64,000 nt of DNA from Leucoraja ocellata. Its lineage: Eukaryota. Shown here piece after piece: positions 2,678 to 55,075 of this stretch (within the stretch, counting starts at the first letter, position 1; every line of letters begins with the position of its first letter). The DNA lies in the NCBI GenBank assembly GCA_036785375.1, contig JAWMAR010000070.1, positions 4,774,001 to 4,838,000 on the forward strand, in the 5' to 3' direction. Under the pieces are notes generated by a model. That model was not told the DNA's origin. It saw only the letters and a program-made list of their open reading frames with translations, and did not search any database. The translations under genes and the position numbers were made by a program.

Positions 2678-2774
2678 ATGGCGGTGGGACAGGGAGAATT
2701 CACCCACCAGAGATGGCCCAGATCCAGGGGAACAGTCGCTCTGTTGGTTCTTGTCGCTGTTGGTCTCACACCAG
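2678..2774 (+). CDS. Gene 1 leader exon MAVGQGEFTHQRWPRSRGTVALLVLVAVGLTP
   Basis: ATG in GACATGG context, hydrophobic core, CAG|GTAAAT phase-1 donor; conserved in all three units. Confidence 0.8.
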
Positions 2775-5700
2775 GTAAATCGGTGTTTTACAAAATGCTC
2801 TGTTCTTTAGAATTATTTACTAGCGCCTTGAATTATTTGTAACCACAGACCTCTCTGTACTGTGTGGGGAGCTGATGATGAATTGCTCAACACTCGTTAG
2901 TTCCTGTAGAGACTTCCATCAGCGGTTGTTGTCGTGTTGTGTGCAGCCAAGTCGGGAGATAACTATCTACAGCTTGCCTTGCCTTGTGGACCTCATTGAA
3001 ACTTACTGAATAGTGAAAGGCCTGGATAGAGTGGATGGGGTGAAGATGTTTACACTAGTGGGAGACTCTAGGACCAGAGGTCGCAGCCTCAGAATTAAAG
3101 GGCGTTGCTTTAGGAAGGAGATGAGGAGGAATTTTGTGAGACAGAAACTGTGAAATTCATTGCCACAGACTGTGGAGGCCATCAATAGGTATTTCTAAGG
3201 CTGAGATGGATAGATTCTTGATCAGTACTGGTGTCAGGAGACCTGGGGAAAAGGTAGGAGGATTTAGTTGAATGGGAAAGATAGATCAGCCATGATTGAT
3301 TGGAGGAGAGTAGACTTGATGGGCCAAATGGCCTAATTCTTCTCCTAGTACTAATGAACATGATCTGTTCTTCAGAATTATTTGCCAGCATCTTGAATTA
3401 TTTTGAGCCACAGAGCAGACTACTGGGCTACGAGCTGCTAAAGATAAAATGCTTGCACACTTGTTCTTCCCTGCACTAATGACTGTTGTGATGCCGTGTG
3501 CAGCCAAATTGTACACAGCTAACTCCCTGTAGAAAATGACCCCACAGCTGGCCTTGTTGATTATGGGTGTAGGGGTAACTCTTGCCCCCAGAACAGAGAG
3601 TTTGCTCCACTATTCTGGTGCAAACTATCTCCAGGTGAACTTTCTCAGTGACTTGACAGCAGATCAGCTAAATGCTTTACCCCTTGCATAATCTCTTGAC
3701 TTCCTCCTTCTCTGACTGTTGGTCTGAAGAAGTGTCTTGACCCGAAACGTCAGCCATTCCTTCTATCCAGAGATGCCCCCTGACCCGCTGCGTTACTCCA
3801 GCATTTAGTGTCTATCAAAGACACACGGCACTCCCTCCACGCACTGCAATGGGAAATGTTGAACCTAAACCTTAGCACATTCAAAGAAAAAACCTGTGAA
3901 AGCCAGCCAATGGGAACAGGCGGGCATCTCAAATGAGGAAGCACCAGAGTGACTGTCCAATTTAGCATTTGGAGAAGTTGTGGTAATCTCTCCCTTCAGA
4001 GAAAAACCAGCTGCCTTACAACAGACTCTGCTGCTCGAGCTGTTCTACACACTTTGCTTTCCCCAGCCTCTGAGTTCTCCTTCAAGGCATTTGTCTTGTG
4101 GCTTGTGAGCCGACCTGGACTGTTGTGATGATGTGTCTCCACCCCAGCTCCTGAATCTACAGTTTCACATGTGTTAGAGTCATAGAGTGATACAGTGTGG
4201 AAACAGGCCCTTCGGCCCAACTTGCCCACACCGGCCAACATGTCTCAGCAACACTAGTCCCACCTGTCCATGTTTGGTCCAAGTCCCTTCAAATCTGTCC
4301 TATCCATGTATCCAGAGGGTCCCACCCTCTCCGGAGACTAAGAAAAGCAGGTCTCCCTACTGTTCACCTAAGGTCCTTCTACAGGGGCACCATCGAGAGT
4401 ATACTGACCCACGGCATCACTTCCTGGTTTGGGAGCTGCAAGGCTTATGAACAAAAACAACTTAACAGGATAGTGAAGACAGCCAGTAGGGTCATTGGTG
4501 CTCCACTCCCTTTCCTGTTGGAGATCTATCAGAAGCGTAACATCAGCAGAGCCATCTCCATTATCAAGGACCCCTATCATCCATCACATCACATCTTCTC
4601 CATTCTGCCACCTGGGAAGAGGTACAGGAGCATCAGCTGCAAAACCAGCAGGATGCCACACAGCTTCTTCCCACAGGCAATAAGGCTGGTTAACGGACTG
4701 TGTCCCCTCCCCATACATCATACACCAACACATCTAACCTCGCCCATACTTTGACAGCTAGGCACCTGTCAAAGCAAAGCCACTGTTCGGTCTCAATGTC
4801 TGTTTTTATTTCAATTTTTAGGCCTATTTTAGTTATGTTCATTTTAATTTTAAATCTATATGTATTTATTCTGTTTTTATTAACTGCACTGACGGGAACT
4901 GATTGAGAAACAATTTTTAGTTTCTTCTGTGTATGTAAGTTAAAATGACATTAAAGTAAATACTGAATACTGAATACATCATCGGTGCCCCGCTCCCTGC
5001 CATGGATGCCCTCCACAGAAAACGGTGTCTGAGACAGGCTGGGAAGATCATCAAAGACCCCTCACACCCCAACCATGGACTGTTTGCCCTCCTCCCATCA
5101 GGGAGGCGTTACAGGAGCCTCAGGTCACGTACTAGTAGGATGAGGAACAGCTTCTACAACAACACAATCACATTGCTGAACTCGGAGTCCCGCCAATAGA
5201 TTTCTCTGGTCCCTCCATCCCCATTGTTTAATTATTCTGTATTTCCTGATTATTCTGTATCTTCTCTCTTTCTATTTTGTTTTGTTTTCTTTATGTACAA
5301 CTACTACAGACTGACGCAAAACTGCATTTCGTTGTACTGATACTTGTATTTGTGCGATGACATTAAAGTTGAATTGAATTGAACTGAATTGAATTGAATT
5401 GAATACCCAGGGCCGGCCTTAAGCCGATTGGCCCGATTGCTCCCAATTGTACCCCGCGAGTAAGGGGGCCCCGCGCCAGTGTAATCTACTCTCGACTCAG
5501 GTAGATCTACCCCGGGTGGAGAGAGAGTAGAGGGATGGAGGGGGAAGAAAGGGGTAGACGGGGAGGGGGATGTGAGGGGGAATGGAGAAGGGGGAGAGGG
5601 GGAGGTGGGTCGTTCGCTCATGGCAGCGCTCCTGCCCCTCCAGTTGCCGTGCTTCACGCACACAGCCCCGACTCCATCCCTCTCTCTCCCCGGGGAGAGG

Positions 5701-8700
5701 CGGTGAACAATACACGGAGGGCTGGGCCGGGGGTTGGGGCATCGTATACAAACATCGGCCTCAGCTCACACCCGTCTGCCCGGACCCCGGCATCCCTCTC
5801 CCTCCCTTCTCTCCTTCCCTCCCTCCTTCCGCTCTTTTCCTTTCTCTCATTCGGTCCATCCCGTCTTTCTCGACTTTCCTCCCTCCCTCCCACACACACA
5901 CATAACGCACAGACAACTAACACACACAACTAAGTTAAGATGGGGTAGAAACCTTTTCACCCAGAGTTGTGAATCTGTAGAATTCTCTGCCACAGAGGGC
6001 AGTGGAGGCCAATTCAATGGATGTATTCAAGAGAGAGTTAGATTTAGCTCTTAGGGCTAATGGAATCATGGGATCACGGGAGCAAGCAGAACTGGGCAGT
6101 GCCGGCTCGAAGGGCCGAATCGTCTCCTCCTGTGCCTATTTTCTATGTTTATATGTTTCTATGAATCATCATCTATCCACTTTCTCCAGAGATAGTTCCT
6201 GTCCAGTCTAAGGTTGTGACCTCAATAACAGGTAGGCCATTGAGGACTCAGATGAGGAAATATCTTTTCACCCAGAGAGTTCCTCTTTCTCCAGAGATAG
6301 TTCCTGTGTTGTTGTGTTACTCCGGCACTTTGTGTCCTTTTGTACATTAACCAGCATCTGCAGTTCCTTGTTTCTACTTGTTCAATGGGGAAGTGGGTTG
6401 TGGTGAGATTGAACACAGGGTGGGTCAGAGTGAGTGACAGGTTGGTTTCCTGTCACATGACCACCACTCATGTCAAGCCACGCCCACGGGGAAGGAGGAT
6501 CTGGGCGCCAGGTAGATTCAGAAGCAGTGTTCAAGAAGGAACTGCAGATGCTGGAAGATAGATATCGCAGTGCAGTAGACAAAGTGTTCAAGAAGGAACT
6601 CAGTTCTGCTTTCACTGGAACTTGGGGAAAAATCCCGGTGAAATGGGAATTAACACCAGCGGGAAAAGCATTAAAGTGCAACAGGATCTATGCAAAAGAA
6701 GAGAGACACAAAATGCTGGAGTAACTCAGCGGGACGGGCAGCATCTCTGGAGAGAAGGAATGGGCGAGGAAACATCACCCGTCGGTTTCTACAGAGATGT
6801 TGCCCGTCCCGCTGAGTTACTCCAGCACTTTGTGTCTTTCTTTGGTGTAAACCAGCTCCTGCAGTTCCTTGCTACACATGATCTATGCGAAACCATGAAC
6901 CTGTCTGAACAGCACAAATGACATGTTTTTTATTGTTAAACCTCAGCTTGTGTTACTGCAGTGTGAGTGATCTTTCATCATTAATGTGCCCACAGGGTCA
7001 AGGGGAATAACTGGATCCGAGGAGGTGAGGGGAGAGTTGGGGCAGTCGGTCACAGTGGGATGTCAGTATGGTCAGGAATACAAGGACAACAGGAAGCTGT
7101 GGAGGAAAGGTGATTCTTACTGGAAATCTCATACTGTGGTTTCTACTGATGACCTACAACAAGGGAGAACATCGATGACTGATGACAAAACACAACGGAT
7201 AGTTTCAGTCACCATCGACAACCTGAAGAAGAGTGATGAAGGACTCTACTGGTGTGTGGTAGTAAAGAGAAACGATTCACCCATTGAATCGACCTCCATC
7301 TCATTGAAGGTTTCTGAAGGTAAGTTGACGATCTCTCCTCACTCTCCCAGATGTGAAAATTCCAGCCTGTGAATTCCCGGCCTCGGTCCAGACGGTGACT
7401 CGGAGCCACATCCCCGGGGGGTCGCGGTAAGGGGGTTGGGTGGATAACTCACTTACTGGGGTCCCGGCCCGTGGGGCCACACCAAGAGCTCACTGTCGCT
7501 GGAGCAATATGGGGGGGGGGGCTGTCAGACACCAGCCCCACGGAAGGTCCCATCTACCGGCGGTTCTGTTGCTGACGGCTCATTTCCACGAAGACGATCG
7601 CTCCGGGACCAGAACCTCTGCCGCCCCCTCACTGGGGCAGGTGGTGGGAAACCCGGGTGGAGATAGGAGTCAATGGGGGAGGGGGCAGGTTAGTAGAAGA
7701 TACTTAAAATTAGAGAACCAACGTTCAAACAGTTGGGTTGTAAACTACCTGAGCCCAATATGAGGTGCGGTTCCTCCAATTTGCATGTGGCCTCACTCTG
7801 GCAATGGAGGAGGCCCAGGACAGAAAGGTCAGTGTGGGAATGGGAAGGGACGTGGACAGGGTTGGCAACCGGGAGATCAAGAATGGTCCCGACCCGAAAA
7901 GGACACCTATCCATTTTCTCCAGAGATTCTGCCTGATCCGCCGAGTTACTCCAGCACTTTGTGTCTATCTTTGGTGTAAACCAGCACCTGCAGTTCCTTA
8001 CTACACATGATCTATGCGAAACCATGAACCTGTCTGAACAGCACAAATGACATGTTTTTTATTGTTAAACCTCAGCTTGTGTTACTGCAGTGTGAGTGAT
8101 CTTTCATCATTAATGTGTCCACAGGGTCAAGGGGAATAACTGGATCCGAGGAGGTGAGGGGAGCGTTGGGGCAGTCGGTCACTGTGGGATGTCAGTATGG
8201 TCAGGAATACAGTGACTACAGGAAGCTGTGGAGGAAAGGTGATTCTTACCGGAATTCTTATACTGTGGTTTCTACTGATCACCAACAACAAGGGAGAACA
8301 TCGATGACTGATGACAAATCACAACGGATAGTTTCAGTCACCATCGACAAGCTGAAGAAGAGTGATGAAGGACTCTACTGGTGTGTGACAGTAAAGAGAA
8401 ACGATTCACCCATTGAATCGACCTCCATCTCATTGAAGGTTTCTGAAGGTAAGTTGGCGATCTCTCCTCACTCTCCTAGATGTGAACATTCCAGCCTGTG
8501 AATTCCCGGCCTCGGTCCTGACGGTGACTCGGTGCCACATCCCCGGGGGTCGCGGTAACGGGGCTGGGTGGATAACTCACTTACTGGGGTCCCGGCCCGT
8601 GGGGCCACACCAAGAGCCCACTGTCGCTGGAGCAATATGGGGGGGGGGGCTGTCAGACACCAGCCCCACGGAAGGTCCCATCTACCGGCGGTTCTGTTGC

Positions 8701-11700
8701 TGACGGCTCATTTCCACGAAGACGATCGCTCCGGGACCAGAACCTCTGCCGCCCCCTCACTGGGGCAGGTGGTGGGAAACCCGGGTGGAGATAGGAGTCA
8801 ATGGGGGAGGGGGCAGGTTAGTAGAAGATACTTAAAATTAGAGAACCAACGTTCAAACCGTTGGGTTGTAAACTACCTGAGCCCAATATGAGGTGCGGTT
8901 CCTCCAATTTGCATGTGGCTTCACTCTGGCAATGGAGGAGGCCCAGGACAGAAAGGTCAGTGTGGGAATGGGAAGGGACATGGACAGGGTTGGCAACCGG
9001 GAGATCAAGAATGGTCTGAACCCGAAAAGGACACCTATCCATTTTCTCCAGAGATTCTGCCTGATCCGCCGAGTTACTCCAGCACTTTGTGTCTATCTTT
9101 GGTTTAAACCAGCACCTGCAGTTCCTCGCTACACATGATCTATGCAAAACCATGAACCTGTCTGAACAGCGCAAATGACATGTTTTTTATTGTTAAACCT
9201 CAGCTTGTGCTGCCGGCGGTTCTGCTGCTGGCGGCTCATTTCCCCAAAGCCGATCACTCCGGGTCCAGAACCTCTTGCTGCAGTGTGAGTGATCTTTCAT
9301 CATTAATGTGTCCACAGGGTCAAGGGGAATAACTGGACCTAAGGAGGTGAGGGGAGAGTTGGGGCAGTCGGTCACTTTGGAATGTCAGTATGGTCAGGAA
9401 TACAGTGACAACAAGAAGCGATGGAGTAAAGGTTATTATTACACAAATTCTTCTACCGTGGTTTCTACTGATGACCCACAATATAGGAGAACATCGATGA
9501 GTGATAACAAAACACAACGGATAGTTTCAGTCACCATCGACAACCTGAAGAAGAGTGATGAAGGATACTACTGGTGTGTGCTGATTGTAAAGGGAATATT
9601 TCCAATCAATAAAAGGACCTCCATCTTATTGACGGTTTCTGAAGGTACGTTGACGATCTCTCCTCACTCTCCCAGATGTGAACATTCCAGCCTGGGAATT
9701 CCCGGCCTCGGTCCTGACGGTGACTCGGTGCCACATCCCCGTGGGTCGGTGTGAAGGAGGGGGGAGCACATTTACTGGGGTCCCGGCCCATGGGGCCACA
9801 CCAAGAGCCCACTGTTCCAGGAGCAGTGTGTGTGTGGGGGGGGGGGGGGGGGGGGGGGCTCATCAATGGGGACCGGCGGTTCTGCTGCTGGCGGCTCATT
9901 TCCCCAAAGACGATCGCTCCAGGTCCAGAACCTCTGCCGCCCCTCACTGGGGCAGGGGAACAGCCAGAACCTCTGGTGCCCCCTCACCCTCTCCCCCTGC
10001 CCGTCACTGTCACACCCACCACACACACAACATCTGTAGAAAGGTCCCAACACTAAACATTGTCAGTTCATTCCTTCCACAGATGCTGCCTGACCTGCTG
10101 AGTTACTCCAGCACTTTGTGTTTTGCTCAAGATTCCAGCACCTGCAATTCCTTGTGTCTCACAAACTTTGGTGATTCATGAGTTCAGTTTATTGTTGTCG
10201 TCTGTACTGAGGTACAGGGAAAAGCTTTTACCATGTTTCCAATGAAGGCCAAATCATTGGGTATTTTTAAGATTCACAGGTTCTCGATTAGTATGAGTGT
10301 CAAGCGATATGGGGAGAAGGGAAGATAATGGGGTTGAGAGGGAGAGATAGATCAGCCATGATTGAATGGCGGAGTAGACATAAATAAGCCAAATGGCCGC
10401 ATTCTGCCCCTATCACATGAACTTCATAACAAGACGATTTCAGTACAGTAGTAGAGGGGTTCTTCCGCAGTTGTATCAGGCTCTGGTAAGACCACATCTG
10501 GAGTATTGTGTACAGTTTTGGTCTAATTTGAGGAAGAACATCCTTGTGATTGAGGCAGTGCAGCGTAGGTTCACGAGATTGCTCCCTGGGATGGCGGGAC
10601 TGTCATATGAGGAAAGATTGAAAAGACTAGGCTCAAAACTGGAGTTTAGAAGGATGAGTGGGTTTCTTATAGAAACTTATAAAATTATAAAAGGACTGGA
10701 CAAGCTTGATGAAGGAAAAATGTTCCCAATGTTGGGCAAGTCCAGAACCAGGGGCCACAGCCTTAGAATAAAGGGGAGGCCATTTCAGACTGCGGTGAGA
10801 AAAAACTTTTTCACCCAGAGAGTTGTGAATTTGTGGAATTCCGTGCCACAGAGGGCAGTGGAGGCCAAATCACTGGATGGATTTAAGAGAGAGTTAGATA
10901 GAGCTCCAGGGGCTAGTGGAATCAAGGGATATGGGGAGAAGGCAGGCACGGGTTATTGATTGGGGACGTTCAGCCCTGATCACAGTGAATGGCGGTGCAG
11001 GCTCGAAGGGCTGAATGGCCTCCTCTTGCACCTATTTTCTATGTTTCTATAACGTATGAACGAAGAATCCTCATGAGATGACTAGATCAAGGGGCTTGGT
11101 CCATCTATGGGGGCCTCAGAAGGATCCTTGCTCAAATCTCTGGATTGGGATTTGAACCCAGGAATCTCCCAACACGGAGCAAGAGCGCTCCCGACTGAGG
11201 CATCTCCGACTAAAGTGGCACAGAACGTGCTTTCAGACTTTTAATGTTCAAAAACGTCATTCACTTTATCTCCACAAGGGTCTCAAACAAGCCGCCCAGA
11301 CATGGTCACCACCACCTCTACAACAATAATCCCAGTGAAATGGGAATTAACACCAGCGGGAAAAGCATTAAAGTGCACCAGGATCTATGCAAAAGGAGAG
11401 AGACACAAAATGCTGGAGTAACTCAGCAGGAAGGGCAGCATCTATGGAGAGAAGGAAATGGGTGAGGAAACATCACCCGTCGGTTTCTCCCGAGATGCTG
11501 CCTGTCCCACTGAGTTACTCCGGCTCTTTGTGTCTATCTTTGGTGTAAACCAGCACCTGCAGTTCCTTGTTACACATGATCTATGCGAAACCATGAACCT
11601 GTCTGAACAGCACAAATGACATGTTTTTTATTGTTAAACCACAGCTTGTGTTGCTGCAGTGTGAGTGATCTTTCATCATTAATGTGCCCACAGGGTCAAG

Positions 11701-12236: not shown

Positions 12237-14421
12237 GGGGGCTCATCAATGGGGACCGGCGGTTCTGCTGCTGGCGGCTCATTTCCCCAAAGACGATCGC
12301 TCCGGGTCCAGAACCCCTGCCGCCCCTCACTGGAGCAGGGGAACAGCCAGAACCTCTGGTGCCCCCTCACCCTCTCCCCCTGCCCATCACTGTCACACTC
12401 ACCACGCACACAACATCTGAAGAAGGGAGGTTACACAGAAAAGCTGGAGAAACTCAGCGGGTGCAGCAGCATCTATGGAGCGAAGGAAATAGGCAACGTT
12501 TCGGGCCGAAACCCTTCTTCAGACTGATCAGGGGTGGGGGTGGGTGGGGACAAGAAAGGGAAAAGGAGGAGTAGCCGGAAGGCTGGAGGGTGGGAGGGGA
12601 CAGCAGGGGAGCTGAGGAAGGGGAGGAGACAGCAAGGACTAACAGAATTGGGAGAAGTCGATGTTCATGCCCCCGGGGTGCAGACTCCCCAAACGGAATA
12701 TGAGGTGCTGTTCCTCCGGTGAAGAAGGGACCCAACCTTAAACATTGTCAGTTCATTCCTTCCACGGATGCTGCCTGACCTGCTGAGTTACTCCAGCACT
12801 TTGTGTTTTGCTCAAGATTCCAGCACCTGCAATTCCTTGTGTCTCACAAACTTTGGTGATTGATGAGCTCAGTTTATTGTTGTGGTCTGTACTGAGGTAC
12901 AGGGAAAAGCTTTTACCATGTTTCCAATGAGGGCCAAGTCATTGGGTATTTTCAGGTGGAGATTGACAGGTTCTCCATTAGTACGGGTGTCAAGCGATAT
13001 GGGGAGAAGGCAGGAGAATGGGGTTGAGAGGGAGAGATAGATCAGCCATGATTGAAAGGTGGAATAGACTCAATGGGCCAAATGGCCTCAATCTGCCCCT
13101 ATCACTTATGAACTAATGAACTAAGAATCCTCAAGAGATGAGTGATATAGACTTTACACTGAGCCACACAAACTGTACAAGATGAGATACTCAACGGGTC
13201 GGGCAGCTTCTGTGGAGAGAGAACGAGAGTTAATGTTTCAGGTAGATACCCCCAACCAAATTGCATTATTTCCAATTCAGTCCGCGTAATGAAAATAGTC
13301 CATGGATCCTCCCGCTCCCAAGTTCTTCTCCAGTGTAGAAGAGATGTGCCTAACTCTAGCAGCAGGCAGATAACACAGCCTGTGGGACTCTGAAGGGCAT
13401 GAAAGATGTCTCTGAATGCTTGCGACCATCTGGTGACATCTTAATGGGTGAGTCTCCTGTCTAGATCAAGAGGCTTGGTCCATCTATGGTGGCCTCAGAA
13501 GGATCCTTGCTCAAATCTCTGGATTGGGATTTGAACCCAGGAATCTCCCCACACAGAGCAAGAGCGCTCCCGACTGAGGCATCTCCCACACATCACTAAA
13601 GTGGCACAGAACGTGCTTTCACACATTTAATGTTCAAAAACTTCATTTTCTTCATCTCCACAAGGATCTCAAAAAAGCCGCCCAGACATAGTCAGCACCA
13701 CCTCTACAACAATAAACACAAAGGCTTCCACCACAACCACTCTGACCACCATGCCTCAAGATACACCAACCACCAAGGCAGCAAGTTCCAATGAGGCTTC
13801 TGGTTCATCAGATGGAAACAGGTTAGTAACTCGAAGAGCCAACTCAGCCTCACCTGAGAACCAATTAGTTCAGTTCAATTCAGCTCAGTTTAAAGATACA
13901 GCGTGGAAATGGGCCCTTTGGCCCACCGAGTCCGCTCTGAGCAGCGATCACCCCATACACCAGTTCTGTTCTACACACTAGGGGCAACTTACTACAAACC
14001 CGCACGTCTTTGGAATGTGGGAGGAAACTGGAGAACCCAGAGTAAACTCTTGCGATCACATGGAGAACGTACAGACTCTGCACTGACAGCACCGGTATCA
14101 GGATCGACCCCGCGTCTACTGTGCTGTGAGGCAGCAACTCTACCGCTGAGCTGACATCTCAATGGGCGAGCCTCATGTCTAGATCAAGGGGCTTGGTCCA
14201 TCTATGGTGGTTTAGGAAGGATCCTTGCTCAAATCTCAGGTTTGGGATTCGAATCAAGAATCTCCCCACACAGAGCAAGATCGTTCCGAACTGAAGCATC
14301 TCCCACACGTCACTAAAGTGACACAGAACGTGATTATAAACATTTAATGTTCAAAGACTTCATTCACTTTATCTTCACAAGGGTCTCAAACATATCACCC
14401 AGATATCCTCACCACTTTGGT

Positions 14422-16110: not shown

Positions 16111-16655
16111 GGTCATTTCCTCGGGTAAAATTTGATGGTGGAGATTATAAACTGTGTTTTAATTGTTATTCAAGGAAAAAAACAGCCAAGACCTTGGAGA
16201 TGAGGTCGGCAGTGGTGGAGGAAGGAGAGGAACAGCGCCGGTGAGCTGGCTGGGTGAGGCCTCACCTCGCATGGAGACGGCCGTGGGAGGCGAGGGGAAA
16301 AGGGTGCGTTGGTGGGTCGAGGTGTGGGCGGAGTGCGAGTGGGCTGCTGGAGGCCCTGCAGCAGCCGGTGGATCGGGTGCCGCTGGAGGTCCTGCAGAGG
16401 TCGGGGATGAGCGTACTGTTCGGACACGGCCTGCAGCGGCACGGAGCGGTGGTGGAGGCACCGACAACATCGCCAGGCCAGGCCGACCCCTGCAACTCCC
16501 ACCCAGTGCCGTCTCCATGACAACGGGCCTTTAAGCCCAAAATAAAATGGGCCTTTAAGCCCAGTTTGATGTTTAAGAATATAAGATACTGCCAGTAATG
16601 TGGCAACTCTTGTGTACTGCATCATATAATCTGCTATTAATACTCTTGTTCTTAG

Positions 16656-20660: not shown

Positions 20661-20757
20661 ATGGCGGTGGGACAGGGAGAATTCACCCACCAGAGATGGC
20701 CCAGATCCAGGGGAACAGTCGCTCTGTTGGTTCTTGTCGCTGTTGGTCTCACACCAG
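20661..20757 (+). CDS. Gene 2 leader exon
   Basis: Same peptide as the gene 1 leader, CAG|GTAAAT donor. Confidence 0.8.
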
Positions 20758-41714: not shown

Positions 41715-41732
41715 CTCCCAGTTCTGGCACCA
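41715..41732 (-). promoter_or_regulatory. Primer-binding site, tRNA-Leu-like
   Basis: TGGTGCCAGAACTGGGAG resembles the complement of the tRNA-Leu(CAA) 3' end (TGGTGTCAGAAGTGGGAT). Confidence 0.6.
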
Positions 41733-42233: not shown

Positions 42234-42330
42234 ATGGCGGTGGGACAGGGAGAATTCACCCACCAGAGACGGCCCAGATCCAGGGGAACAGTCGCTCTGT
42301 TGGTTCTTGTCGCTGTTGGTCTCACATCAG
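42234..42330 (+). CDS. Gene 3 leader exon MAVGQGEFTHQRRPRSRGTVALLVLVAVGLTS
   Basis: ATG, hydrophobic core, CAG|GTAAAT. Confidence 0.8.
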
Positions 42331-45300: not shown

Positions 45301-48300
45301 CTCCAGAAATAGTTCCTGTCCCATTGTGTTACTCCGGCACTTTGTGTCCTTTTGTACATTAACCAGCATCTGCAGTTCCTTGTTTCTACTAGTTCAATGG
45401 GGAAGTGGGTTGTAGTGAGATTGAACACAGGGTGGGTCAGAGTGAGTGACAGGTTGGCTTCCTGTCACATGACCACCACTCTTGTCAAGCCACGCCCACA
45501 GGGAAGGAGGATCTGGGCGCCAGGTAGATTCAGAAGCAGTGTTCAAGAAGGAACTGCAGATGCTGGAAGATAGATATCGCAGTGGAGTAGACAAAGTGTT
45601 CAAGAAGGAACTCAGTTCTGCTTTCACTGGAACTTGGGGAATAATCCCGGTGAAATGGGAATTATCACCAGCGGGAAAACCATTAAAGTGCAACAGGATC
45701 TATGCAAAAGAAGAGAGACACAAAATGCTGGAGTAACTCAGCGGGACGGGCAGCGTCTCTGGAGAGAAGGAAATGGGTGTGGAATCATCACCCGTCGGTT
45801 TCTCCAGAGATGCTGCCTGTCCCGCTGAGTTACTCCAGCACTTTGTGTCTATCTTTGGTGTAAACCAGCACCTGCAGTTCCTTGCTACACATGATCTATG
45901 CGAAACCATGAACCTGTCTGAACAGCACAAATGACATGTTTTTTTATTGTTAAATCTCAGCTTGTGTTACTGCAGTGTGAGTGATCTTTCATCATTAATG
46001 TGCCAACAGGGTCAAGGGGAATAACTGAACCCGTGGAGGTGAGGGGAGAGTTGGGGCAGTCGGTCACGGTGGAATGTCAGTATGGTCAAAAATACAAAGA
46101 CAACGACAAGCTATGGAGTAAAGGTGATTATTTCCTTCCATCTTCTACCGTGGTTTCTACTGATCACCCACAACAAGGGAGAACATCGATGACTGATGAC
46201 AAAGAACAACGGATAGTTTCAGTAACCATCGACAACCTGGAGAAGAGTGATGAAGGACTCTACTGGTGTGTGATAGTAAAGGGAAAACATTCGCTCATTG
46301 AATTGGCCTCCATCTCATTGACGGTTTCTGAAGGTAAGTTGCCGATCTCCTCACTCTCCCAGATGTGAAAATTCCAGCCTGTGAATTCCCGGCCTCGGTC
46401 CTGACGGTGACTCGGTGCCACATCCCCGGGGGTCGCGGTAAGGGGGTTGGGTGGATAACTCACTTACTGGGGTCCCGGCCCGTGGGGCCACACCAAGAGC
46501 TCACTGTCCCAGGAGCAATATGGGGGGGGGACTGTCAGACACCAGCCCCACGGAAGGTCCCATCTACCGGCGGTTCTGTTGCTGACGGCTCATTTCCACG
46601 AAGACGATCGCTCCGGGACCAGAACCTCTGCCGCCCCCTCACTGGGGCAGGTGGTGGGAAACCCGGGTGGAGATAGGAGTCAATGGGGGAGGGGGCAGGT
46701 TAGTAGAAGATACTTAAAATTAGAGAACCAACGTTCAAACAGTTGGGTTGTAAACTACCTGAGCCCAATATGAGGTGCGGTTCCTCCAATTTGCATGTGG
46801 CCTCACTCTGGCAATGGAGGAGGCCCAGGACAGAAAGGTCAGTGTGGGAATGGGAAGGGACATGGACAGGGTTGGCAACCGGGAGATCAAGAATGGTCCC
46901 GACCCGAAAAGGACACCTATCCATTTTCTCCAGAGATTCTGCCTGATCCGCCGAGTTACTCCAGCACTTTGTGTCTATCTTTGGTGTAAACCAGCACCTG
47001 CAGTTCCTTGCTACACATGATCTATGCAAAACCATGAACCTGTCTGAACAGCACAAATGACATGTTTTTTATTGTTAAACCACAGCTTGTGTTACTGCAG
47101 TGTGAGTGATCTTTCATCATTAATGTGCCCACAGGGTCAAGGGGAATAACTGGATCCGAGGAGGTGAGGGGAGAGTTGGGGCAGTCGGTCACTGTGGAAT
47201 GTCAGTATGGTCAGGAATACACTGACAACAGGAAGCGATGGAGTAAAGGTGATTCTTACTGGAAATCTCATACTGTGGTTTCTACTGATGACCAACAACA
47301 AGGGAGAACATCGATGACTGATGACAAATCACAACAGATAGTTTCAATCACCATCGACAAGCTGGAGAAGAGTGATGAAGGACTCTACTGGTGTGTGACA
47401 GTAAAGAGAAACGATTCACCCATTGAATTGGCCTCCATCTCATTGACGGTTTCTGAAGGTAAGTTGACGATCTCTCCTCACTCTCCTAGATGTGAAAATT
47501 CCAGCCTGTGAATTCCCGGCCTCGGTCCTGACGGTGACTCGGTGCCACATCCCCGGGGGTCGCGGTAAGGGGGTGGGGTGGATAAGTCACTTAAGGGGTC
47601 CCGGCCCGTGGGGCCACACCAAGAGCTCACTGTCCCAGGAGCAATATGGGGGGGGGGGGGGACTGTCAGACACCAGCCCCACGGAAGGTCCCATCTACTG
47701 GCGGTTCTGTTGCTGACGGCTCATTTCCACGAAGACGATCGCTCCGGGACCAGAACCTCTGCCGCCCTCACTGGGGCAGGTGGTGGGAAACCCGGGTGGA
47801 GATAGTAGTCAATGGGGGAGGGGGCAGGTTAGTAGAAGATACTTAAAATTAGAGAACCAACGTTCAAACCGTTGGGTTGTAAACTACCTGAGCCCAATAT
47901 GAGGTGCGGTTCCTCCAATTTGCCTGTGGCCTCACTCTGGCAATGGAGGAGGCCCAGGACAGAAAGGTCAGTGTGGGAATGGGAAGGGACATGGACAGGG
48001 TTGGCAACCGGGAGATGAAGAATGGTCCCGACCCGAAAAGGACACCTATCCATTTTCTCCAGAGATTCTGCCTGATCCGCCGAGTTACTCCAGCACTTTG
48101 TGTCTATCTTTGGTTTAAACCAGCACCTGCAGTTCCTCGCTACACATGATCTATGCAAAACCATGAACCTGTCTGAACAGCGCAAATTACATGTTTTTTA
48201 TTGTTAAACCTCAGCTTGTGCTGCCGGCGGTTCTGCTGCTAGCGGCTCATTTCCCCAAAGCCGATCGCTCCGGGTCCAGAACCTCTTGCTGCAGTGTGAG

Positions 48301-48846
48301 TGATCTTTCATCATTAATGTGTCCACAGGGTCAAGGGGAATAACTGGACCTAAGGAGGTGAGGGGAGAATTGGGGCAGTCGGTCACTGTGGAATGTCGGT
48401 ATGATCAGGAATACACTGACAACAAGAAGCGATGGAGTAAAGGTTATTATAACACAAATTCTTCTACCGTGGTTTCTACTGATGACCCACAATATAGGAG
48501 AACATCGATGAGTGATAACAAAACACAACGGATAGTTTCAGTCACCATCGACAACCTGAAGAAGAGTGATGAAGGATACTACTGGTGTGTGCTGATTGTA
48601 AAGGGAATATTTCCAATCAATAAAAGGACCTCCATCTCATTGACGGTTTCTGAAGGTACGTTGACGATCTCTCCTCACTCTCCCAGATGTGAACATTCCA
48701 GCCTGGGAATTCCCGGCCTCGGTCCTGACGGTGACTCGGTGCCACATCCCCGGGGGTCGGGGTGAAGGAGGGGGGAGCACATTTACTGGGGTCCCGGCCC
48801 ATGGGGCCACACCAAGAGCCCACTGTTCCAGGAGCAGTGTGTGTGT

Positions 48847-48877
<31 letters not shown>

Positions 48878-51800
48878 CTCATCAATGGGGACCGGCGGTT
48901 CTGCTGCTGGCGGCTCATTTCCCCAAAGACGATCGCTCCAGGTCCAGAACCTCTGCCGCCCCTCACTGGAGCAGGGGAACAGCCAGAACCTCTGGTGCCC
49001 CCTCACCCTCTCCCCCTGCCCGTCACTGTCACACCCACCACACACACAACATCTGTAGAAAGGTCCCAACACTAAACATTGTCAGTTCATTCCTTCCACA
49101 GATGCTGCCTGACCTGCTGAGTTACTCCAGCACTTTGTGTTTTGCTCAAGATTCCAGCACCTGCAATTCCTTGTGTCTCACAAACTTTGGTGATTCATGA
49201 GTTCAGTTTATCGTTGTCGTCTGTACTGAGGTACAGGGAAAAGCTTTTACCATGTTTCCAATGAAGGCCAAATCATTGGGTATTTTTCAGATTCACAGGT
49301 TCTCGATTAGTATGAGTGTCAAGCGATATGGGGAGAAGGGAAGAGAATGGGGTTGAGAGGGAGAGATAGATCAGCCATGATTGAATGGCGGAGTAGACAT
49401 AAATAAGCCAAATGGCCGCATTCTGCCCCTATCACATGAACTTCATAACAAGACGATTTCAGTACAGTAGTAGAGGGGTTCTTCCGCAGTTGTATCAGGC
49501 TCTGGTAAGACCACATCTGGAGTATTGTGTACAGTTTTGGTCTAATTTGAGGAAGAACATCCTTGTGATTGAGGCAGTGCAGCGTAGGTTCACGAGATTG
49601 CTCCCTGGGATGGCGGGACTGTCATATGAGGAAAGATTGAAAAGACTAGGCTCAAAACTGGAGTTTAGAAGGATGAGTGGGTTTCTTATAGAAACTTATA
49701 AAATTATAAAAGGACTGGACAAGCTTGATGAAGGAAAAATGTTCCCAATGTTGGGCAAGTCCAGAACCAGGGGCCACAGCCTTAGAATAAAGGGGAGGCC
49801 ATTTCAGACTGAGGTGAGAAAAAACTTTTTCACCCAGAGAGTTGTGAATTTGTGGAATTCCGTGCCACAGAGGGCAGTGGAGGCCAAATCACTGGATGGA
49901 TTTAAGAGAGAGTTAGATAGAGCTCCAGGGGCTAGTGGAATCAAGGGATATGGGGAGAAGGCAGGCACGGGTTATTGATTGGGGCGTTCAGCCCTGATCA
50001 CAGTGAATGGCGGTGCAGGCTCGAAGGGCTGAATGGCCTCCTCTTGCACCTATTTTCTATGTTTCTATAACGTATGAAGGAAGAATCCTCATGAGATGAC
50101 TAGATCAAGGGGCTTGTTCATCTATGGTGGCCTCAGAAGGATCCTTGCTCAAATCTCTGGATTGGGATTTGAACCCAGGAATCTCCCCACACGGAGCAAG
50201 AGCGCTCCCGACTGAGGCATCTCCGACACATCACTAAAGTGGCACAGAACGTGCTTTCAGACTTTTAATGTTCAAAAACGTCATTCACTTTATCTCCACA
50301 AGGGTCTCAAACAAGCCGCCCAGACATGGTCACCACCACCTCTACAACAATAATCCCAGTGAAATGGGAATTAACACCGGCGGGAAAAGCATTAAAGTGC
50401 ACCAGGATCTATGCAAAAGGAGAGAGACACAAAATGCTGGAGTAACTCAGCGGGACGGGCAGCATCTCTGGAGAGAAGGAAATGGGTGAGGAAACATCAC
50501 CCGTCGGTTTCTCCCGAGATGCTGCCTGTCCCGCTGAGTTACTCCGGCTCTTTGTGTCTATCTTTGGTGTAAACCAGCACCTGCAGTTCCTTGTTACACA
50601 TGATCTATGCGAAACCATGAACCTGTCTGAACAGCACAAATGACATGTTTTTTATTGTTAAACCACAGCTTGTGTTACTGCAGTGTGAGTGATCTTTCAT
50701 CATTAATGTGCCCACAGGGTCAAGGGGAATAACTGGACCCGAGGAGGTGAGGGGAGAGTTGGGGCAGTCGGTCACTGTGGAATGTCGGTACGATCGGAAA
50801 TACAAAGACAACGACAAGCTATGGAGTAAAGGTGATTATTACCTGTCATCTCCTACCGTGGTTTCTACTGATCACCCACAACAAGAGAGAACATCGATGA
50901 CTGATGACAAAAAACAACGGATAGTTTCAGTCACCATCGACAACCTGGAGAAGAGTGATGAAGGACGCTACTGGTGTGTGCTGATTTTAAAGGAAATATT
51001 TTCAAGCAATGAAAGGACCTCCATCTCATTGACGGTTTCTGAAGGTACGTTGACGATCTCTCCTCACTCTCCCAGATGTGAACATTCCAGCCTGGGAATT
51101 CCCGGCCTCGGTCCTGACGGTGACTCGGTGCCTCATCTCCGGGGGTCGGGGTGAAGGAGGGGGGAGCACATTTACTGGGGTCCCGGCCCATGGGGCCACA
51201 CCAAGAGCCCACTGTCCCAGGAGCAGTGTGTGTGAGGGGGGGGGGGTGGCGTGGGGGGAGCTCATCAATGGGGACCGGCGGTTCTGCTGCTGGCGGTTCA
51301 TTTCCCCAAAGACGATCGCTCCGGGTCCATAACCTCTGCCGCCCCTCACTGGAGCAGGGGAACAGCCAGAACCTCTGGTGCCCCCTCACCCTCTCCCCCT
51401 GCCCGTCACTGTCACACCCACCACACACACAACATCTGTAGAAAGGTCCCAACCTTAAACATTGTCAGTTCATTCCTTCCACGGATGCTGCCTGACCTGC
51501 TGAGTTACTCCAGCACTTTGTGTTTTGCTCAAGATTCCAGCACCTGCAATTCCTTGTGTCTCACAAACTTTGGTGATTCATGAGCTCAGTTTATTGTTGT
51601 CGTCTGTACTGAGGTACAGGGAAAAGCTTTTACCATGTTTCCAATGAAGGCCAAATCATTGGGTATTTTTAAGATTCACAGGTTCTCGATTAGTATGAGT
51701 GTCAAGCGATATGGGGAGAAGGGAAGAGAATGGGGTTGAGAGGGAGAGATAGATCAGCCATGATTGAATGGCGGAGTAGACATAAATAAGCCAAATGGCC

Positions 51801-54800
51801 GCATTCTGCCCCTATCACATGAACTTCATAACAAGACGATTTCAGTACAGTAGTAGAGGGGTTCTTCCGCAGTTGTATCAGGCTCTGGTAAGACCACATC
51901 TGGAGTATTGTGTACAGTTTTGGTCTAATTTGAGGAAGAACATCCTTGTGATTGAGGCAGTGCAGCGTAGGTTCACGAGATTGCTCCCTGGGATGGCGGG
52001 ACTGTCATATGAGGAAAGATTGAAAAGACTAGGCTCAAAACTGGAGTTTAGAAGGATGAGTGGGTTTCTTATAGAAACTTATAAAATTATAAAAGGACTG
52101 GACAAGCTTGATGAAGGAAAAATGTTCCCAATGTTGGGCAAGTCCAGAACCAGGGGCCACAGCCTTAGAATAAAGGGGAGGCCATTTCAGACTGAGGTGA
52201 GAAAAAACTTTTTCACCCAGAGAGTTGTGAATTTGTGGAATTCCGTGCCACAGAGGGCAGTGGAGGCCAAATCACTGGATGGATTTAAGAGAGAGTTAGA
52301 TAGAGCTCCAGGGGCTAGTGGAATCAAGGGATATGGGGAGAAGGCAGGCACGGGTTATTGATTGGGGACGTTCAGCCCTGATCACAGTGAATGGCGGTGC
52401 AGGCTCGAAGGGCTGAAGTCATTGGGTATTTTCAGGTGGAGATTGACAGGTTCTCAATTAGTACGGGTGTCAAGCGATATGGGGAGAAGGGAAGAGAATG
52501 GGGTTGAGAGGGAGAGATAGATCAGCCATGATTGAAAGGTGGAATAGACTCAATGGGCCAAATGGCCTCAATCTGCCCCTATCATTTATGAACTAATGAA
52601 CTAAGAATCCTCAAGCGATGAGTGATATAGACTTTACACTGAGTCACACAAACTGTACAAGATGAGATATTCAACGGGTCGGGCAGCTTCTGTGGAGAGA
52701 GAACGAGAGTTAATGTTTCAGGTAGATACCTCCAACCAAATTGCATTATTTCCAATTCAGTCCGCGTAATGAAAATAGTCCATGGATCCTCCCGCTCCCA
52801 AGTTCTTCTCCAACGTAGAAAAGATGTGCCTAACTCTAGCAGCAGGCAGATAACACAGCCTGTGGGACTCTGAAGGGCATGAAAGAAGTCTCGGAATGCT
52901 TGTGACCATCTGGTGGCATCTTAATGGGTGAGTCTCTGGTCTAGATCAAGAGGCTTGGTCCATCTATGGTGGCCTCAGAAGGATCTTTGCTCAAATCTCT
53001 GGATTGGGATTTGAACCCAGGAATGTCCCCACACAGAGCAAGAGCGCTCCCGACTGAAGCATCTCCCACACATCACTAAAGTGGCACAGAACATGCTTTC
53101 AGACATTTAATGTTCAAAAACGTCATTCCCTTTATCTCCACAAGGATCTCAAACAAGCCGCCCAGACATGGTCACCACCACCTCTGCAACAATAAGCACA
53201 AAGGCTTCCACCACAACCATTCTGACCACCATGCCTCAAGATGCACCAACCACCAAGGCAGCAAGTTCCACAGAGTCTCCTGGTTCAACACCTCCAAACA
53301 GGTTAGTAACTCGAAGAGTCAACTCAGCCTCACCTGAGAACAAATTAGTTAAGTTCAGTTCAGCTCAGTTTAAAGATACAGCGTGGAAATGGACCCTTTG
53401 GCCCACCCAGTCCGCTCTGAGCAGCGATCACCCCATACACCAGTTCTGTTCTACACACTAGGGGAAACTTACTACAAACCCGCACGTCTTTGGAATGTGG
53501 GAGGAAACTGGAGAACCCAGAGTAAACTCTTGCGATCACAGGGAGAACGTACAGACTCTGCACTGACAGCACCGGTATAAGGATCGACCCCGCATCTACT
53601 GTGCTGTGAGGCAGCAACTCTACCGCTGAGCTGACATCTCAATGGGCGAGCCTCATGTCTACATCAAGGGGCTTGGTCCATCTATGGTGGCCTAGGAAGG
53701 ATCCTTGCTCAAATCTCAGGTTTGGGATTCGAATCAAGAATCTCCCCACACAGAGCAAGATCGCCCCCAACTGAAGCATCTCCCACACGTCACTAAAGTG
53801 GCACAGAACGTGATTATAAACATTTAATGTTCAAAGACTTCATTCACTTTATCTTCACAAGGGTCTCAAACATATCACCCAGATATCCTCACCACTTTGG
53901 TGTGTGTGTGGGGGGGGGGGGGGGGGGTTGCACGGTGGCGCAGCGGTAGAGTTGCTGCCTTACAATGCTTGTAGCGCTGGAGACCCAGGTTCGATCCCGA
54001 CTACAGGTGCTGCCTGTACGGGGTTTGTACGTTATCCCCACGACCGCATGGGTTTTCTCTGAGATCTTTGATTTCCTCCAACACTCTAAAGACATACAGG
54101 TATGTAAGTAGATTGGCTTGGCGTATGTGTCAATTGCCCCTAGTGTGTGTAGCCTAGTGTTAGTGTGCGAGGATCGCTGGTCGGTGTGGACTCCATGGGC
54201 CGTCGGGCCTGTTTCCGCGCTATATCTCAAAATTAAACTAAACTGGATTAAAATATGGTCACCACCACCTCAGGAACCACCACACCCACTCTGCCTCCGG
54301 AAGCATCGACCACCAGGGGCTCCTGGTTCATCGCCTCGACACAGGTCAGTGACTCAAAGTCCCAGTACTTTGAGAAAGCGTGGCTGATCACATTCCAGTC
54401 CATTGATAAATACTCCTTGGCCCTGACTAAAGTCCCTCTGTCCTTAGTACACCCAGTGGCCCTACCATTGTGAATGTCTACCCTTACATGATGCCAAAAA
54501 CAAATAACGTCACACTTATCACGGTTCAATACCTGCTGGCATTGCTCTGCCCAACATACCAGTTGCTTCTTATCCCTCTGTGGTCTATGATTATCGTACT
54601 TTCCAAAATGAGACAATGTTGGTGTAATCTGTAAACTCGTAAATCATACTTCCAACATTAACATCTAAGGCCGGCAGATGGGACTAGTGTAGATAAGGAC
54701 ATCATGGTCGGCAATGGGGAAATTGGGTCAAAGGACATGTTTTCGTGCTCTATGTCTGACCATCAAAATGAACATCTAAGTTGTTAATGCATGTAGTCAT

Positions 54801-55075
54801 GGAACACCTCCAAGGAATGGGTGCATGTTGCGATATCAACATCTCACCAATGTCTACGCCACAACCTGGGATCACACTGAATGATTCCGTGTGCAATATG
54901 ATGAAAGAAAATTACCAGCGTTGATCTGTGGTAACTCTGTGTGGAAGTAATAATATTTCCTTGGATTTCCAGGAACTTGTTCGCCTTGTGTTGGGGTGTG
55001 TTACGCTGGGTACTCTTTGGAATTCTGCTTCTCTTCCCGGTTTCCATCAGCTGTGTGACAACTTTGAAAAGGTGA
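42234..55075 (+). CDS. CD300/pIgR-like receptor gene 3, 4 V-Ig domains, ~552 aa; join(42234..42330,46010..46333,47135..47458,48329..48655,50718..51044,53145..53301,54973..55075)
   Basis: Phases compatible, 1659 nt open to TGA. Confidence 0.85.
43767..44419 (+). mobile_element. Rex1/Babar-type LINE 3' fragment (gene 3 intron 1)
   Basis: Paralogue of 4325..4977. Confidence 0.8.
46010..46333 (+). CDS. Gene 3 V-type Ig exon D1
   Basis: 324 nt open, AACAG acceptor, GTAAGT donor. Confidence 0.92.
47135..47458 (+). CDS. Gene 3 V-type Ig exon D2
   Basis: 324 nt open, canonical sites. Confidence 0.92.
48329..48655 (+). CDS. Gene 3 V-type Ig exon D3
   Basis: 327 nt open, canonical sites. Confidence 0.92.
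49444..50068 (+). mobile_element. CR1 LINE 3' fragment (paralogue of 10425..11050)
   Basis: Near-identical 188-aa ORF. Confidence 0.9.
50303..50445 (+). pseudogene. Chimeric truncated stalk exon (gene 3)
   Basis: Paralogue of 11279..11421, open to TAA. Confidence 0.6.
50718..51044 (+). CDS. Gene 3 V-type Ig exon D4
   Basis: 327 nt open, DEGRYWC. Confidence 0.92.
51827..52416 (+). mobile_element. CR1 LINE 3' fragment (intragenic duplicate in gene 3)
   Basis: ORF identical to 49412..49978; truncated in the 3' UTR. Confidence 0.88.
53145..53301 (+). CDS. Gene 3 Ser/Thr-rich stalk exon
   Basis: GSQTSRPDMVTTTSATISTKASTTTILTTMPQDAPTTKAASSTESPGSTPPN; phase 1 to phase 2. Confidence 0.8.
53862..54344 (+). 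pseudogene. Duplicate stalk exon disrupted by a SINE (gene 3)
   Basis: Paralogue of 14382..14873. Confidence 0.62.
54973..55075 (+). CDS. Gene 3 TM exon RNLFALCWGVLRWVLFGILLLFPVSISCVTTLKR*
   Basis: Phase-2 acceptor; 9 nt shorter than in genes 1/2 but in frame. Confidence 0.82.

What the first reader, a model, noticed from the sequence alone, without database searches (positions are those of the whole stretch)
2678..55075. Expanded tandem family of activating-type CD300/pIgR-like receptors with variable Ig-domain number (4/2/4)
Seen: three intact paralogues with leader, n V-Ig exons, mucin-like stalk and Arg-containing TM; partial units at both window edges imply more copies. Established: mammalian CD300 receptors have one V domain, and pIgR/PIGRL have several fairly divergent ones. 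Inference: here the domains are recent near-identical duplicates (each copied with its flanking intron), so this is a young lineage-specific expansion in both gene number and domain number, and a candidate diversified innate receptor family of cartilaginous fish.
Basis: partly seen in the sequence, partly recalled or inferred. Interest (0 to 1): 0.8.

Follow-up and report, generated by a model that had tools for sequence, protein, structure and literature searches.

The report
Skate activating CD300/pIgR-like receptor gene array
Three neighbouring skate genes encode activating immune receptors with two or four CD300/pIgR-type antibody-like domains whose outer parts evolve unusually fast; they belong to a receptor family that is already annotated and probably already described in skates.

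Summary
The window carries three tandem units of 18-26 kb, each with one intact gene. All 22 exons are open with GT-AG borders.

The Ig domain folds like mouse CD300lf (TM-score 0.89-0.91). By sequence it is nearest to pIgR D5 and CLM-1. The genes are not pIgR: the TM is charged, the tail has 24 residues, and there are many copies.

RefSeq already names close relatives "pIgR-like" or "CMRF35-like" in little skate, thorny skate and other batoids, including an ITIM-bearing counterpart. The architecture matches what I recall of the skate MDIR family (Cannon 2006). I could not obtain MDIR sequences or that paper.

What this work adds:
- Ig exons differ three times more than introns between genes 1 and 3 (p 9e-15).
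- Omega is 2.74 (p 3e-5), while the TM core is invariant.
- The CD300 C-C' disulfide is lost.
- Domains cluster by lineage.

RNA support is weak: reads fall on exons only, and no junctions were listed. The scan noted the same family in neighbouring windows.

Verdict: a real feature and a new member of a known kind.

The parts
2678..2774 (+). gene 1 leader exon (ATG, hydrophobic core, phase-1 donor)
   Evidence: first 33 residues identical to P0001 (97% over the 35-aa tblastn match, which runs into the intron)
6996..7319 (+). gene 1 Ig exon 1 (V-set, 324 nt, phase 1/1)
8125..8448 (+). gene 1 Ig exon 2
9318..9644 (+). gene 1 Ig exon 3 (327 nt); 108/108 identical to domain 2 of RefSeq P0001
11694..12020 (+). 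gene 1 Ig exon 4
13665..13821 (+). gene 1 Ser/Thr-rich stalk exon
15498..15605 (+). gene 1 TM exon with Arg; TGA embedded in the donor
16175..16244 (+). gene 1 tail exon, coding part with stop (22 residues, no Tyr)
20661..20757 (+). gene 2 leader exon
25073..25396 (+). gene 2 Ig exon 1 (donor GAAT|GTAAGT)
   Evidence: RNA reads
26200..26523 (+). gene 2 Ig exon 2
   Evidence: RNA reads
27853..28009 (+). gene 2 stalk exon (identical in protein to gene 1)
   Evidence: RNA reads
29685..29792 (+). gene 2 TM exon with Arg
   Evidence: RNA reads
30362..30431 (+). gene 2 tail exon, coding part with stop; RNA reads continue to at least 31000 (probable 3' UTR)
42234..42330 (+). gene 3 leader exon (2 residue changes, donor intact)
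46010..46333 (+). gene 3 Ig exon 1
47135..47458 (+). gene 3 Ig exon 2
48329..48655 (+). gene 3 Ig exon 3
50718..51044 (+). gene 3 Ig exon 4
53145..53301 (+). gene 3 stalk exon (15.5 non-synonymous against 0.5 synonymous differences from gene 1)
54973..55071 (+). gene 3 TM exon with Arg (9 nt shorter at its 5' end; TM core identical to genes 1 and 2)

Best explanation
The window holds three tandemly duplicated, intact genes of a skate multigene family of paired activating and inhibitory receptors. RefSeq calls the family pIgR-like or CMRF35-like, and it is probably the family published as MDIR.

Each gene encodes a type I membrane glycoprotein. It has a signal peptide, two or four CD300/pIgR-type V domains that lack the family's second disulfide, and an O-glycosylated stalk. 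The TM helix carries a buried Arg, and the 24-residue cytoplasmic tail has no tyrosine.

Inferred mechanism: the Arg pairs with the TM aspartate of an ITAM adaptor of the DAP12/FcR-gamma class. Ligand binding by the V domains would then activate leukocytes through Syk-type signalling. ITIM-bearing relatives with almost the same ectodomain, encoded elsewhere in the cluster, would give the opposing signal.

Gene number grew by segmental duplication of 18-26 kb units. Domain number grew by tandem duplication of symmetric phase-1 exons together with their introns, followed by exon-sized exchange between copies. The ectodomain exons are under diversifying selection while the TM core is frozen. That pattern is expected for receptors in an arms race with variable, probably pathogen-derived, ligands.
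For: Shown here:
- Ten V-set exons arranged 4/2/4. All 22 exons are open with GT-AG borders, and exon lengths sum to multiples of three: 1734, 1080 and 1725 nt (arithmetic).
- The units are 96.6-97.9% identical.
- A confident model (pLDDT 94) matches mouse CD300lf best, with TM-score 0.89-0.91 and 32% identity. Human CD300f, teleost pIgR and pIgR D1 follow. The sequence search of PDB gives pIgR D5 and CLM-1.
- The Arg lies inside the hydrophobic TM stretch, and the TM core of 78 nt shows 0 differences among the three genes.
- No ITIM-type exon is in the window.
- An inhibitory 3-domain counterpart, P0155, has the same leader and carries Tyr motifs in its tail. A 1-domain activating form, P0176, has the same TM and tail.
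- dN/dS exceeds 1 in 44 of 45 Ig exon pairs. Omega is 2.74 against omega 1, with 2dlnL 17.5 and p 2.8e-5.
- Between genes 1 and 3, Ig exons show 84/1302 mismatches against 117/5711 outside them, p 9e-15.
- The stalk shows 15.5 non-synonymous against 0.5 synonymous differences.
- Oligo-dT RNA-seq reads fall on all exon-bearing unique bins of gene 2 and at most 0.05 depth on 9 unique intron bins.
- Domains cluster by lineage.
Against: - No splice junction of the model was listed. Exon depth is only 0.4-2.7, about 5% of the run was read, and reads at 95% or more identity may come from paralogues or another species.
- The single-cell run X22 and the contig run X20 gave nothing on these exons.
- Adaptor pairing, cell type and ligand are inferred only.
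- Synonymous diversity is also higher in the loops (0.123 against 0.062), and exon histories differ from flank histories. Part of the excess exon divergence therefore comes from exchange with divergent copies, not from point substitution alone.
- Recombination violates the single-tree assumption of the omega test.
- MDIR identity rests on my recall. No protein from the MDIR source skate and no MDIR-named protein appeared among 29 hits or 18 hits.
Confidence: 0.8

Rival explanations
1. These are skate orthologues of the polymeric Ig receptor, as the RefSeq name suggests, and they carry polymeric IgM across epithelia.
For: The best sequence matches in PDB are pIgR chains, with domain 5 scoring best. 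The genes have several tandem V domains. RefSeq names the relatives pIgR-like.
Against: The TM carries an Arg, and the tail has 24 residues with no sorting or transcytosis signals. There are at least three tandem copies with 2 or 4 domains plus ITIM-bearing counterparts. The single domain matches CD300lf better than pIgR by fold. The ectodomain is diversifying rather than conserved. A 2014 survey found no PIGR homologue in shark genomes (PMC4016189, passages read).
Confidence: 0.04
2. The copies are recently duplicated, unexpressed or decaying genes, and the fast exon change is only relaxed constraint.
For: No junction reads were obtained and exon depth is low. An LTR-type element sits 277 nt upstream of gene 3's start codon.
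Against: Relaxation gives omega near 1, not 2.74. No stop, frameshift or lost splice site occurs in 22 exons, even though Ig exons diverge by up to 18%. The TM core is invariant, and the 3' exons of genes 1 and 2 are identical against a 2.5% background. RNA reads lie on exons and not on introns.
Confidence: 0.08
3. The three units are an assembly artefact: one locus or two haplotypes laid out in tandem.
For: The units are highly similar. I could not measure copy number, because the depth has no single-copy baseline.
Against: The units differ by 2-3.5% outside exons, by domain number (4/2/4), by a 9-nt indel in the TM exon, and by a 3.3-kb insertion present in one unit only. Neighbouring windows of the same genome were noted by the scan to continue the array (unchecked).
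Confidence: 0.04
4. Domain number is set mainly at the RNA level. Because every Ig exon is a symmetric phase-1 cassette with the same first residues, exon skipping yields 1-4 domain isoforms from one gene, and the genomic 4/2/4 says little about the proteins.
For: All 10 Ig exons are phase 1/1 and start with the same residues. RefSeq P0001 has 3 domains, one of them identical to gene 1's third.
Against: No skipping junction was seen, although none of any kind was listed. P0001's other two domains and its stalk differ from all three genes, so it is more likely another paralogue or allele.
Confidence: 0.25

Closest known systems
MDIR, modular domain immune-type receptors of the clearnose skate (Cannon et al. 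2006, Immunogenetics 58:362). The paper was not held. Its content is recalled, apart from two sentences in PMC3031540.
   Same: A skate multigene family of activating and inhibitory IgSF receptors. [quoted passage not shown] From recall: 1-6 Ig domains, MDIR1 with a positively charged TM residue, and MDIR2/3 with ITIMs.
   Different: Sequence relationship was not tested. No MDIR-named protein and no protein from the MDIR source species was returned. As I recall, MDIR domains were described as I- or C2-set of four subfamilies. Here all ten domains are one V-set type with two subtypes.
Mammalian CD300 (CMRF35/CLM/IREM) family
   Same: The V domain has the same fold (CD300lf TM-score 0.89-0.91, 32% identity). 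The family shares the mucin-like stalk, paired members with a charged TM or with ITIMs, and clustered genes.
   Different: CD300 proteins have one V domain with a second (C-C') disulfide. Here there are 2 or 4 domains, and both extra cysteines are replaced in all ten. Orthology and synteny were not tested.
Polymeric Ig receptor (pIgR)
   Same: Tandem V domains of the same subtype, and the best sequence match in PDB (domain 5).
   Different: pIgR is a single-copy gene with an uncharged TM and a long sorting tail, and its domains are old and divergent (established knowledge). Here the TM carries Arg, the tail has 24 residues, and the domains are young duplicates that are 71-90% identical.
Zebrafish PIGR-like (PIGRL) clusters
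   Same: Akula et al. 2014 report 25 very similar copies in two clusters, each with two or three Ig-like domains, and read this as a recent expansion (PMC4016189, passage read). That is the same kind of lineage-specific expansion of pIgR/CD300-type domains.
   Different: It arose independently in teleosts. The lipid binding and the secreted forms of PIGRL are recalled, not checked, and there is no evidence for either here.
Teleost NILT and mammalian TREM/NKp44
   Same: Single or double V domains of the same superfamily branch, in activating and inhibitory forms. TREM-1, TREM-2 and NKp44 appear lower in the hit lists. NILTs are described as a rapidly evolving cluster (bioRxiv 10.1101/2022.04.21.489081, passages read).
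   Different: The matches are weaker than to CD300 and pIgR, and the cysteine patterns differ.

Membership tests
CD300/pIgR-type V-set Ig domain | V-set fold with the canonical B-F disulfide and the Trp of strand C | tested here: met
   Pfam V-set E 6.6e-14 to 1.6e-12 in 4 of 4 exons scanned, of 10. C22, W35 and C86 are invariant in 10 of 10. Model pLDDT 94. Top structural hits are CD300lf, CD300f and pIgR.
CD300 family (mammalian sense) | Single V domain | tested here: not met
   2 or 4 domains per gene.
CD300 family (mammalian sense) | Second disulfide between strands C and C' (the motif is recalled; it is visible as two conserved Cys columns in most homologues of alignment A2) | tested here: not met
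   Both positions are non-Cys in 10 of 10 window domains (W-R or W-S, then S, H, Y or P), while most of the other 30 rows of A2 keep them.
CD300 family (mammalian sense) | Paired members: a charged TM residue with a short tail, against an ITIM tail | tested here: met
   Arg in the TM and a 24-residue tail without Tyr in 3 of 3 genes. The ITIM-type relative P0155 is from little skate. No ITIM exon in this window.
CD300 family (mammalian sense) | Orthology or conserved synteny with the mammalian CD300 locus | not testable with these tools
Polymeric Ig receptor | Uncharged TM and long cytoplasmic tail with sorting and transcytosis signals; single-copy gene (established knowledge) | tested here: not met
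   Arg in the TM, 24-residue tail, three tandem copies.
Polymeric Ig receptor | Binding of J-chain-containing polymeric Ig through domain 1 | not testable with these tools
   Needs a binding assay. The best sequence match is to pIgR domain 5, not domain 1.
MDIR (skate) | Skate multigene family with a variable number (1-6) of Ig domains, and activating (charged TM) and ITIM forms (recalled abstract; family description in PMC3031540) | tested here: met
   2 and 4 domains here. 1, 2, 3 and 4 domains in the skate relatives P0176, P0157, P0001/P0155 and P0154. Arg in the TM here and an ITIM-type tail in P0155.
MDIR (skate) | Sequence membership: domains group with deposited MDIR1-5 proteins | not testable with these tools
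   No MDIR sequence could be fetched. 0 of 29 hits and 0 of 18 hits carry the name or the source species. The paper was not held.

The most novel reading that the evidence does not exclude
This part of the skate cluster is a germline-diversified, multi-V-domain activating receptor array. Selection drives amino-acid change across the whole ectodomain (omega about 2.7; strongest in the C-C' and F-G loops, where the CD300 disulfide was replaced by a Tyr-rich, sequon-bearing loop). Symmetric phase-1 exons let gene conversion, exon duplication and possibly exon skipping reshuffle domains between activating and inhibitory genes. If so, it would be a cartilaginous-fish counterpart of KIR- or NITR-style variable innate recognition, built from CD300/pIgR domains, and it would go beyond what was described for MDIR.
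Probability: 0.3. Interest if true: 0.6.

Novelty: new member of a known kind. Interest (0 to 1): 0.42.

Why it matters
Paired activating and inhibitory Ig receptors that evolve quickly (KIR, LILR, Ly49, CD300, NITR) mark host-pathogen conflict. Their deep history is unclear because each lineage rebuilds them.

This locus gives a clean, fully resolved example in a cartilaginous fish. It shows the unit of gene duplication, the unit of domain duplication, exon-sized exchange between copies, a frozen signalling TM and a positively selected ectodomain.

It also shows that the RefSeq label 'pIgR-like' should not be read as evidence for a pIgR in cartilaginous fish, a point still debated in the literature on mucosal Ig transport. 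The practical value is a set of exact exon coordinates for cloning, expression and ligand screens. The biology is expected for this kind of family rather than surprising.

Tried and rejected
- A first AlphaFold run with only the 10 window domains gave pLDDT 40 and was discarded. The run with 40 sequences was used instead.
- I looked for ITIM-type TM or cytoplasmic exons with the C-terminus of P0155. Only the stalk matched, so the genes are not dual-form.
- I tried to read the MDIR paper by PMC id and by PubMed id, and a Litman-group review by PMC id. None is held.
- Literature searches for MDIR, CD300 with shark or skate, pIgR with cartilaginous fish, and PIGRL found no description of this locus in the held library. 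One search was badly framed and uninformative.
- Two database searches with skate family members returned no MDIR-named protein.
- Copy number from reads was not obtainable, because the depth has no single-copy baseline and most bins are swamped by repeats.
- The pIgR, pseudogene and artefact readings were rejected for the reasons given under the rivals.
- The scan's 'Dscam-like docking site' note (s1-885045) was not tested.
- I could not see supplements of any paper. They might hold MDIR or skate receptor lists.
Full report
**What is in the window.** The 64-kb window has no N. It consists of three tandem, self-similar units:
- 1-4977 matches 17976-22955 at 96.8%.
- 5395-12424 matches 44406-51443 at 96.6%.
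- 12720-18146 matches 26908-32330 at 97.5%.
- 27118-35290 matches 52409-60597 at 96.8%.
- 35292-37459 matches 61832-64000 at 97.9%.

tblastn with the first Ig exon finds exactly ten V-type exons, all on the + strand, arranged 4/2/4.

**Gene models.**
- Every Ig exon is 324 or 327 nt, open, preceded by AG and followed by GT, and in phase 1 at both ends. All ten begin with the same six residues.
- Each unit has a leader exon with an ATG, a hydrophobic core and a phase-1 donor.
- Each has a 157-nt stalk exon with 24 Ser/Thr in 51 residues.
- Each has a TM exon with an Arg inside the hydrophobic stretch.
- Each has a last coding exon of 22 residues plus stop. I recognised it because it matches the C-terminus of RefSeq protein P0001.

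An unspliced message would therefore end two codons after the exon.

Adding exon lengths gives 1734, 1080 and 1725 nt, all multiples of three, so the predicted products are 577, 359 and 574 residues. Every search used single exons, and the joined step was left out.

**What kind of domain.**
- Four of four exons scanned are Pfam V-set.
- phmmer against PDB gives pIgR chains first, with domain 5 scoring best, and then CLM-1/CD300f at 3e-15.
- A model built on 40 aligned sequences has pLDDT 94. A first model on ten sequences failed.
- Foldseek puts mouse CD300lf first (TM-score 0.89-0.91, 32% identity). Human CD300f, teleost pIgR, human pIgR D1, CD300a and CD300c follow.
- The two extra cysteines that most homologues keep after the strand-C Trp and in C' are absent from all ten window domains. 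A variable, often Tyr-rich loop replaces them.

**Relatives and species.** A full HMMER scan found 1899 proteins at E of 0.001 or below.
- The best hit, P0001, is RefSeq XP_055510911.1, 'polymeric immunoglobulin receptor-like' of *Leucoraja erinacea*.
  - Its first 33 residues are identical to the leaders of genes 1 and 2.
  - Its second domain is 108/108 identical to gene 1's third Ig exon.
  - Its other two domains match at best 90/107 and 101/107.
- The window therefore comes from this skate or a very near relative, and P0001 is another paralogue or allele.
- P0155, from the same species, has the same leader and three such domains, but an uncharged TM and a long tail with Tyr motifs. It is an inhibitory counterpart.
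- P0176, from *Amblyraja radiata* and named 'CMRF35-like molecule 3', is a one-domain form with the same Arg-TM and tail.
- No ITIM-type exon lies in this window.

**Evolution.**
- In a FastTree (LG+gamma, midpoint-rooted) of the 10 window domains plus 42 domains cut from 17 named proteins, domains group by lineage. Leucoraja with Amblyraja, Rhinoraja, Narcine, and Hemitrygon with Mobula each form their own group. Support values were not inspected.
- Domain number therefore grew repeatedly and recently, or the domains are homogenised within lineages.
- Within the window there are two exon types: positions 1 and 2, and positions 3 and 4. The two-domain gene has one of each.
- Tandem blocks of exon plus intron are 94.6-96.5% identical.
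- Flank and exon histories disagree. Gene 1's first exon has the upstream flank of 'first' exons (0.04 from genes 2 and 3) but the coding sequence of 'second' exons (0.045-0.058, against 0.128-0.165 to its positional counterparts). This indicates exon-sized conversion.

**Selection.**
- Nei-Gojobori dN/dS exceeds 1 in 44 of 45 exon pairs. The exception is 0.89.
- A codon model gives omega 2.74 and kappa 2.10 with lnL -1238.02. The best null with omega 1, over seven kappa values, has lnL -1246.78. That gives 2dlnL of 17.5 and p of 2.8e-5.
- Over the collinear 7 kb of genes 1 and 3, Ig exons carry 84 mismatches in 1302 positions against 117 in 5711 elsewhere, Fisher p 9e-15. The peaks lie on exons 1, 2 and 4 but not on exon 3.
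- Non-synonymous diversity is highest in the C-C' loop (0.286) and the F-G loop (0.285). The N-glycosylation sequons at positions 43 and 92, which lie in these two loops, come and go between copies.
- The stalk shows 15.5 non-synonymous against 0.5 synonymous differences between genes 1 and 3. The 78-nt TM core has none among the three genes.

Points against a simple reading of these numbers:
- Synonymous diversity is also doubled in the loops.
- Recombination breaks the single-tree assumption of the omega test.
- Exchange with divergent copies therefore contributes to the excess exon divergence.

**Expression.** One read-laying run was allowed, and I used it on 25020-31000, which covers gene 2 from its first Ig exon onward.
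- In an oligo-dT RNA-seq run of a species labelled like one of the DNA holders, with about 5% of the run read, summed depth on exon-bearing unique bins was as follows:
  - 0.4-1.2 on Ig exon 1
  - 2.3-2.7 on Ig exon 2
  - 0.7 on the stalk
  - 2.5 on the TM exon
  - 2.3-2.8 from 30420 to 31000, beyond the stop
- Nine unique intron bins had 0-0.05.
- No predicted junction appears among the 15 joints listed (702 more joints were not shown).
- The single-cell run and a small contig run gave nothing on the exons.
- Reads at 95% identity may also come from paralogues.

This is weak positive evidence for transcription of this gene type. It is not proof of the models.

**Artefact check.** The units differ by 2-3.5% outside exons, in domain number, by a 9-nt indel in the TM exon, and by a 3.3-kb element with 225-nt terminal direct repeats and an integrase ORF that is present only upstream of gene 3. 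That argues against a collapsed or duplicated assembly. Copy number could not be measured.

**Comparison with what is known.**
- The genes fail the pIgR definition: the TM is charged, the tail is short, and there are many copies.
- They fail two CD300 features: a single domain and the second disulfide.
- They share the CD300 fold, stalk and paired logic.
- Akula et al. 2014 (PMC4016189, passages read) found no PIGR homologues in sharks. The same paper describes 25 recently expanded two- or three-domain PIGR-like genes in zebrafish, a parallel case.
- My recollection of the MDIR abstract adds 1-6 domains, a charged TM in MDIR1 and ITIMs in MDIR2/3. That fits this locus.
- Unchecked notes of this scan place the window inside a cluster spanning at least about 0.93 Mb that also has C2 modules and inhibitory genes.
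- I put about 75% on this being the MDIR family. The sequence test could not be run.

**Verdict.** This is a real, intact, probably expressed array of activating CD300/pIgR-like receptor genes. It is a new member of a known and already annotated kind. The ectodomain shows a well-supported signal of diversification, and the anatomy of gene and domain duplication is clean.

Noticed in passing
window 38618-41957: A 3.3-kb element is present only in unit C. It has 225-nt direct repeats at both ends (97% identical) and a 928-codon open frame on the minus strand with integrase zinc-binding and core domains. It is inserted 277 nt upstream of gene 3's start codon, and the homologous flanks overlap by 5 bases (a likely target-site duplication). 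It may affect gene 3's promoter.
   Followed up: partly
window 15603-15609, 29790-29796, 55069-55075: The donor of each TM exon reads AG|GTGA, so an in-frame TGA follows directly if the intron is retained. That would give a protein ending two residues after the TM exon, without the 22-residue tail. Another note of the scan saw the same in a neighbouring window.
   Followed up: partly
window 780-1352(-), 10384-10956, 18766-19338(-), 49403-49975, 51786-52358: A 191-codon open frame recurs five times, including in the introns after gene 1 Ig3 and after gene 3 Ig3 and Ig4. The one copy scanned (10384-10956) has no Pfam match. It looks like the tail of an interspersed retroposon that was copied along with the Ig exons.
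   Followed up: partly
window 60247-61124 and 61743-62122: A reverse-transcriptase (RVT_1) fragment lies in the intergenic region after gene 3. Next to it is a 200-nt tandem repeat of 1.9 copies.
   Followed up: no
window 13665-13821 against 53145-53301: The stalk exons of genes 1 and 3 differ by 15.5 non-synonymous and 0.5 synonymous changes, while Ser/Thr content stays at 24 of 51. The stalks of genes 1 and 2 are identical.
   Followed up: partly
Ig exons, residues 43, 63 and 92 of each domain: N-glycosylation sequons are present in some domains and absent in others. NSS in the C-C' loop occurs in g1 Ig3, g1 Ig4 and g3 Ig3. NDS in the F-G loop occurs in g1 Ig1, g1 Ig2 and g3 Ig2. There are none in gene 2.
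   Followed up: no
window 6704-12020: A separate note of the scan proposes a Dscam-like docking and selector arrangement in front of the Ig exons. The conserved boxes upstream of the exons are expected from the duplication of exon-plus-intron blocks. The complementarity claim was not examined.
   Followed up: no
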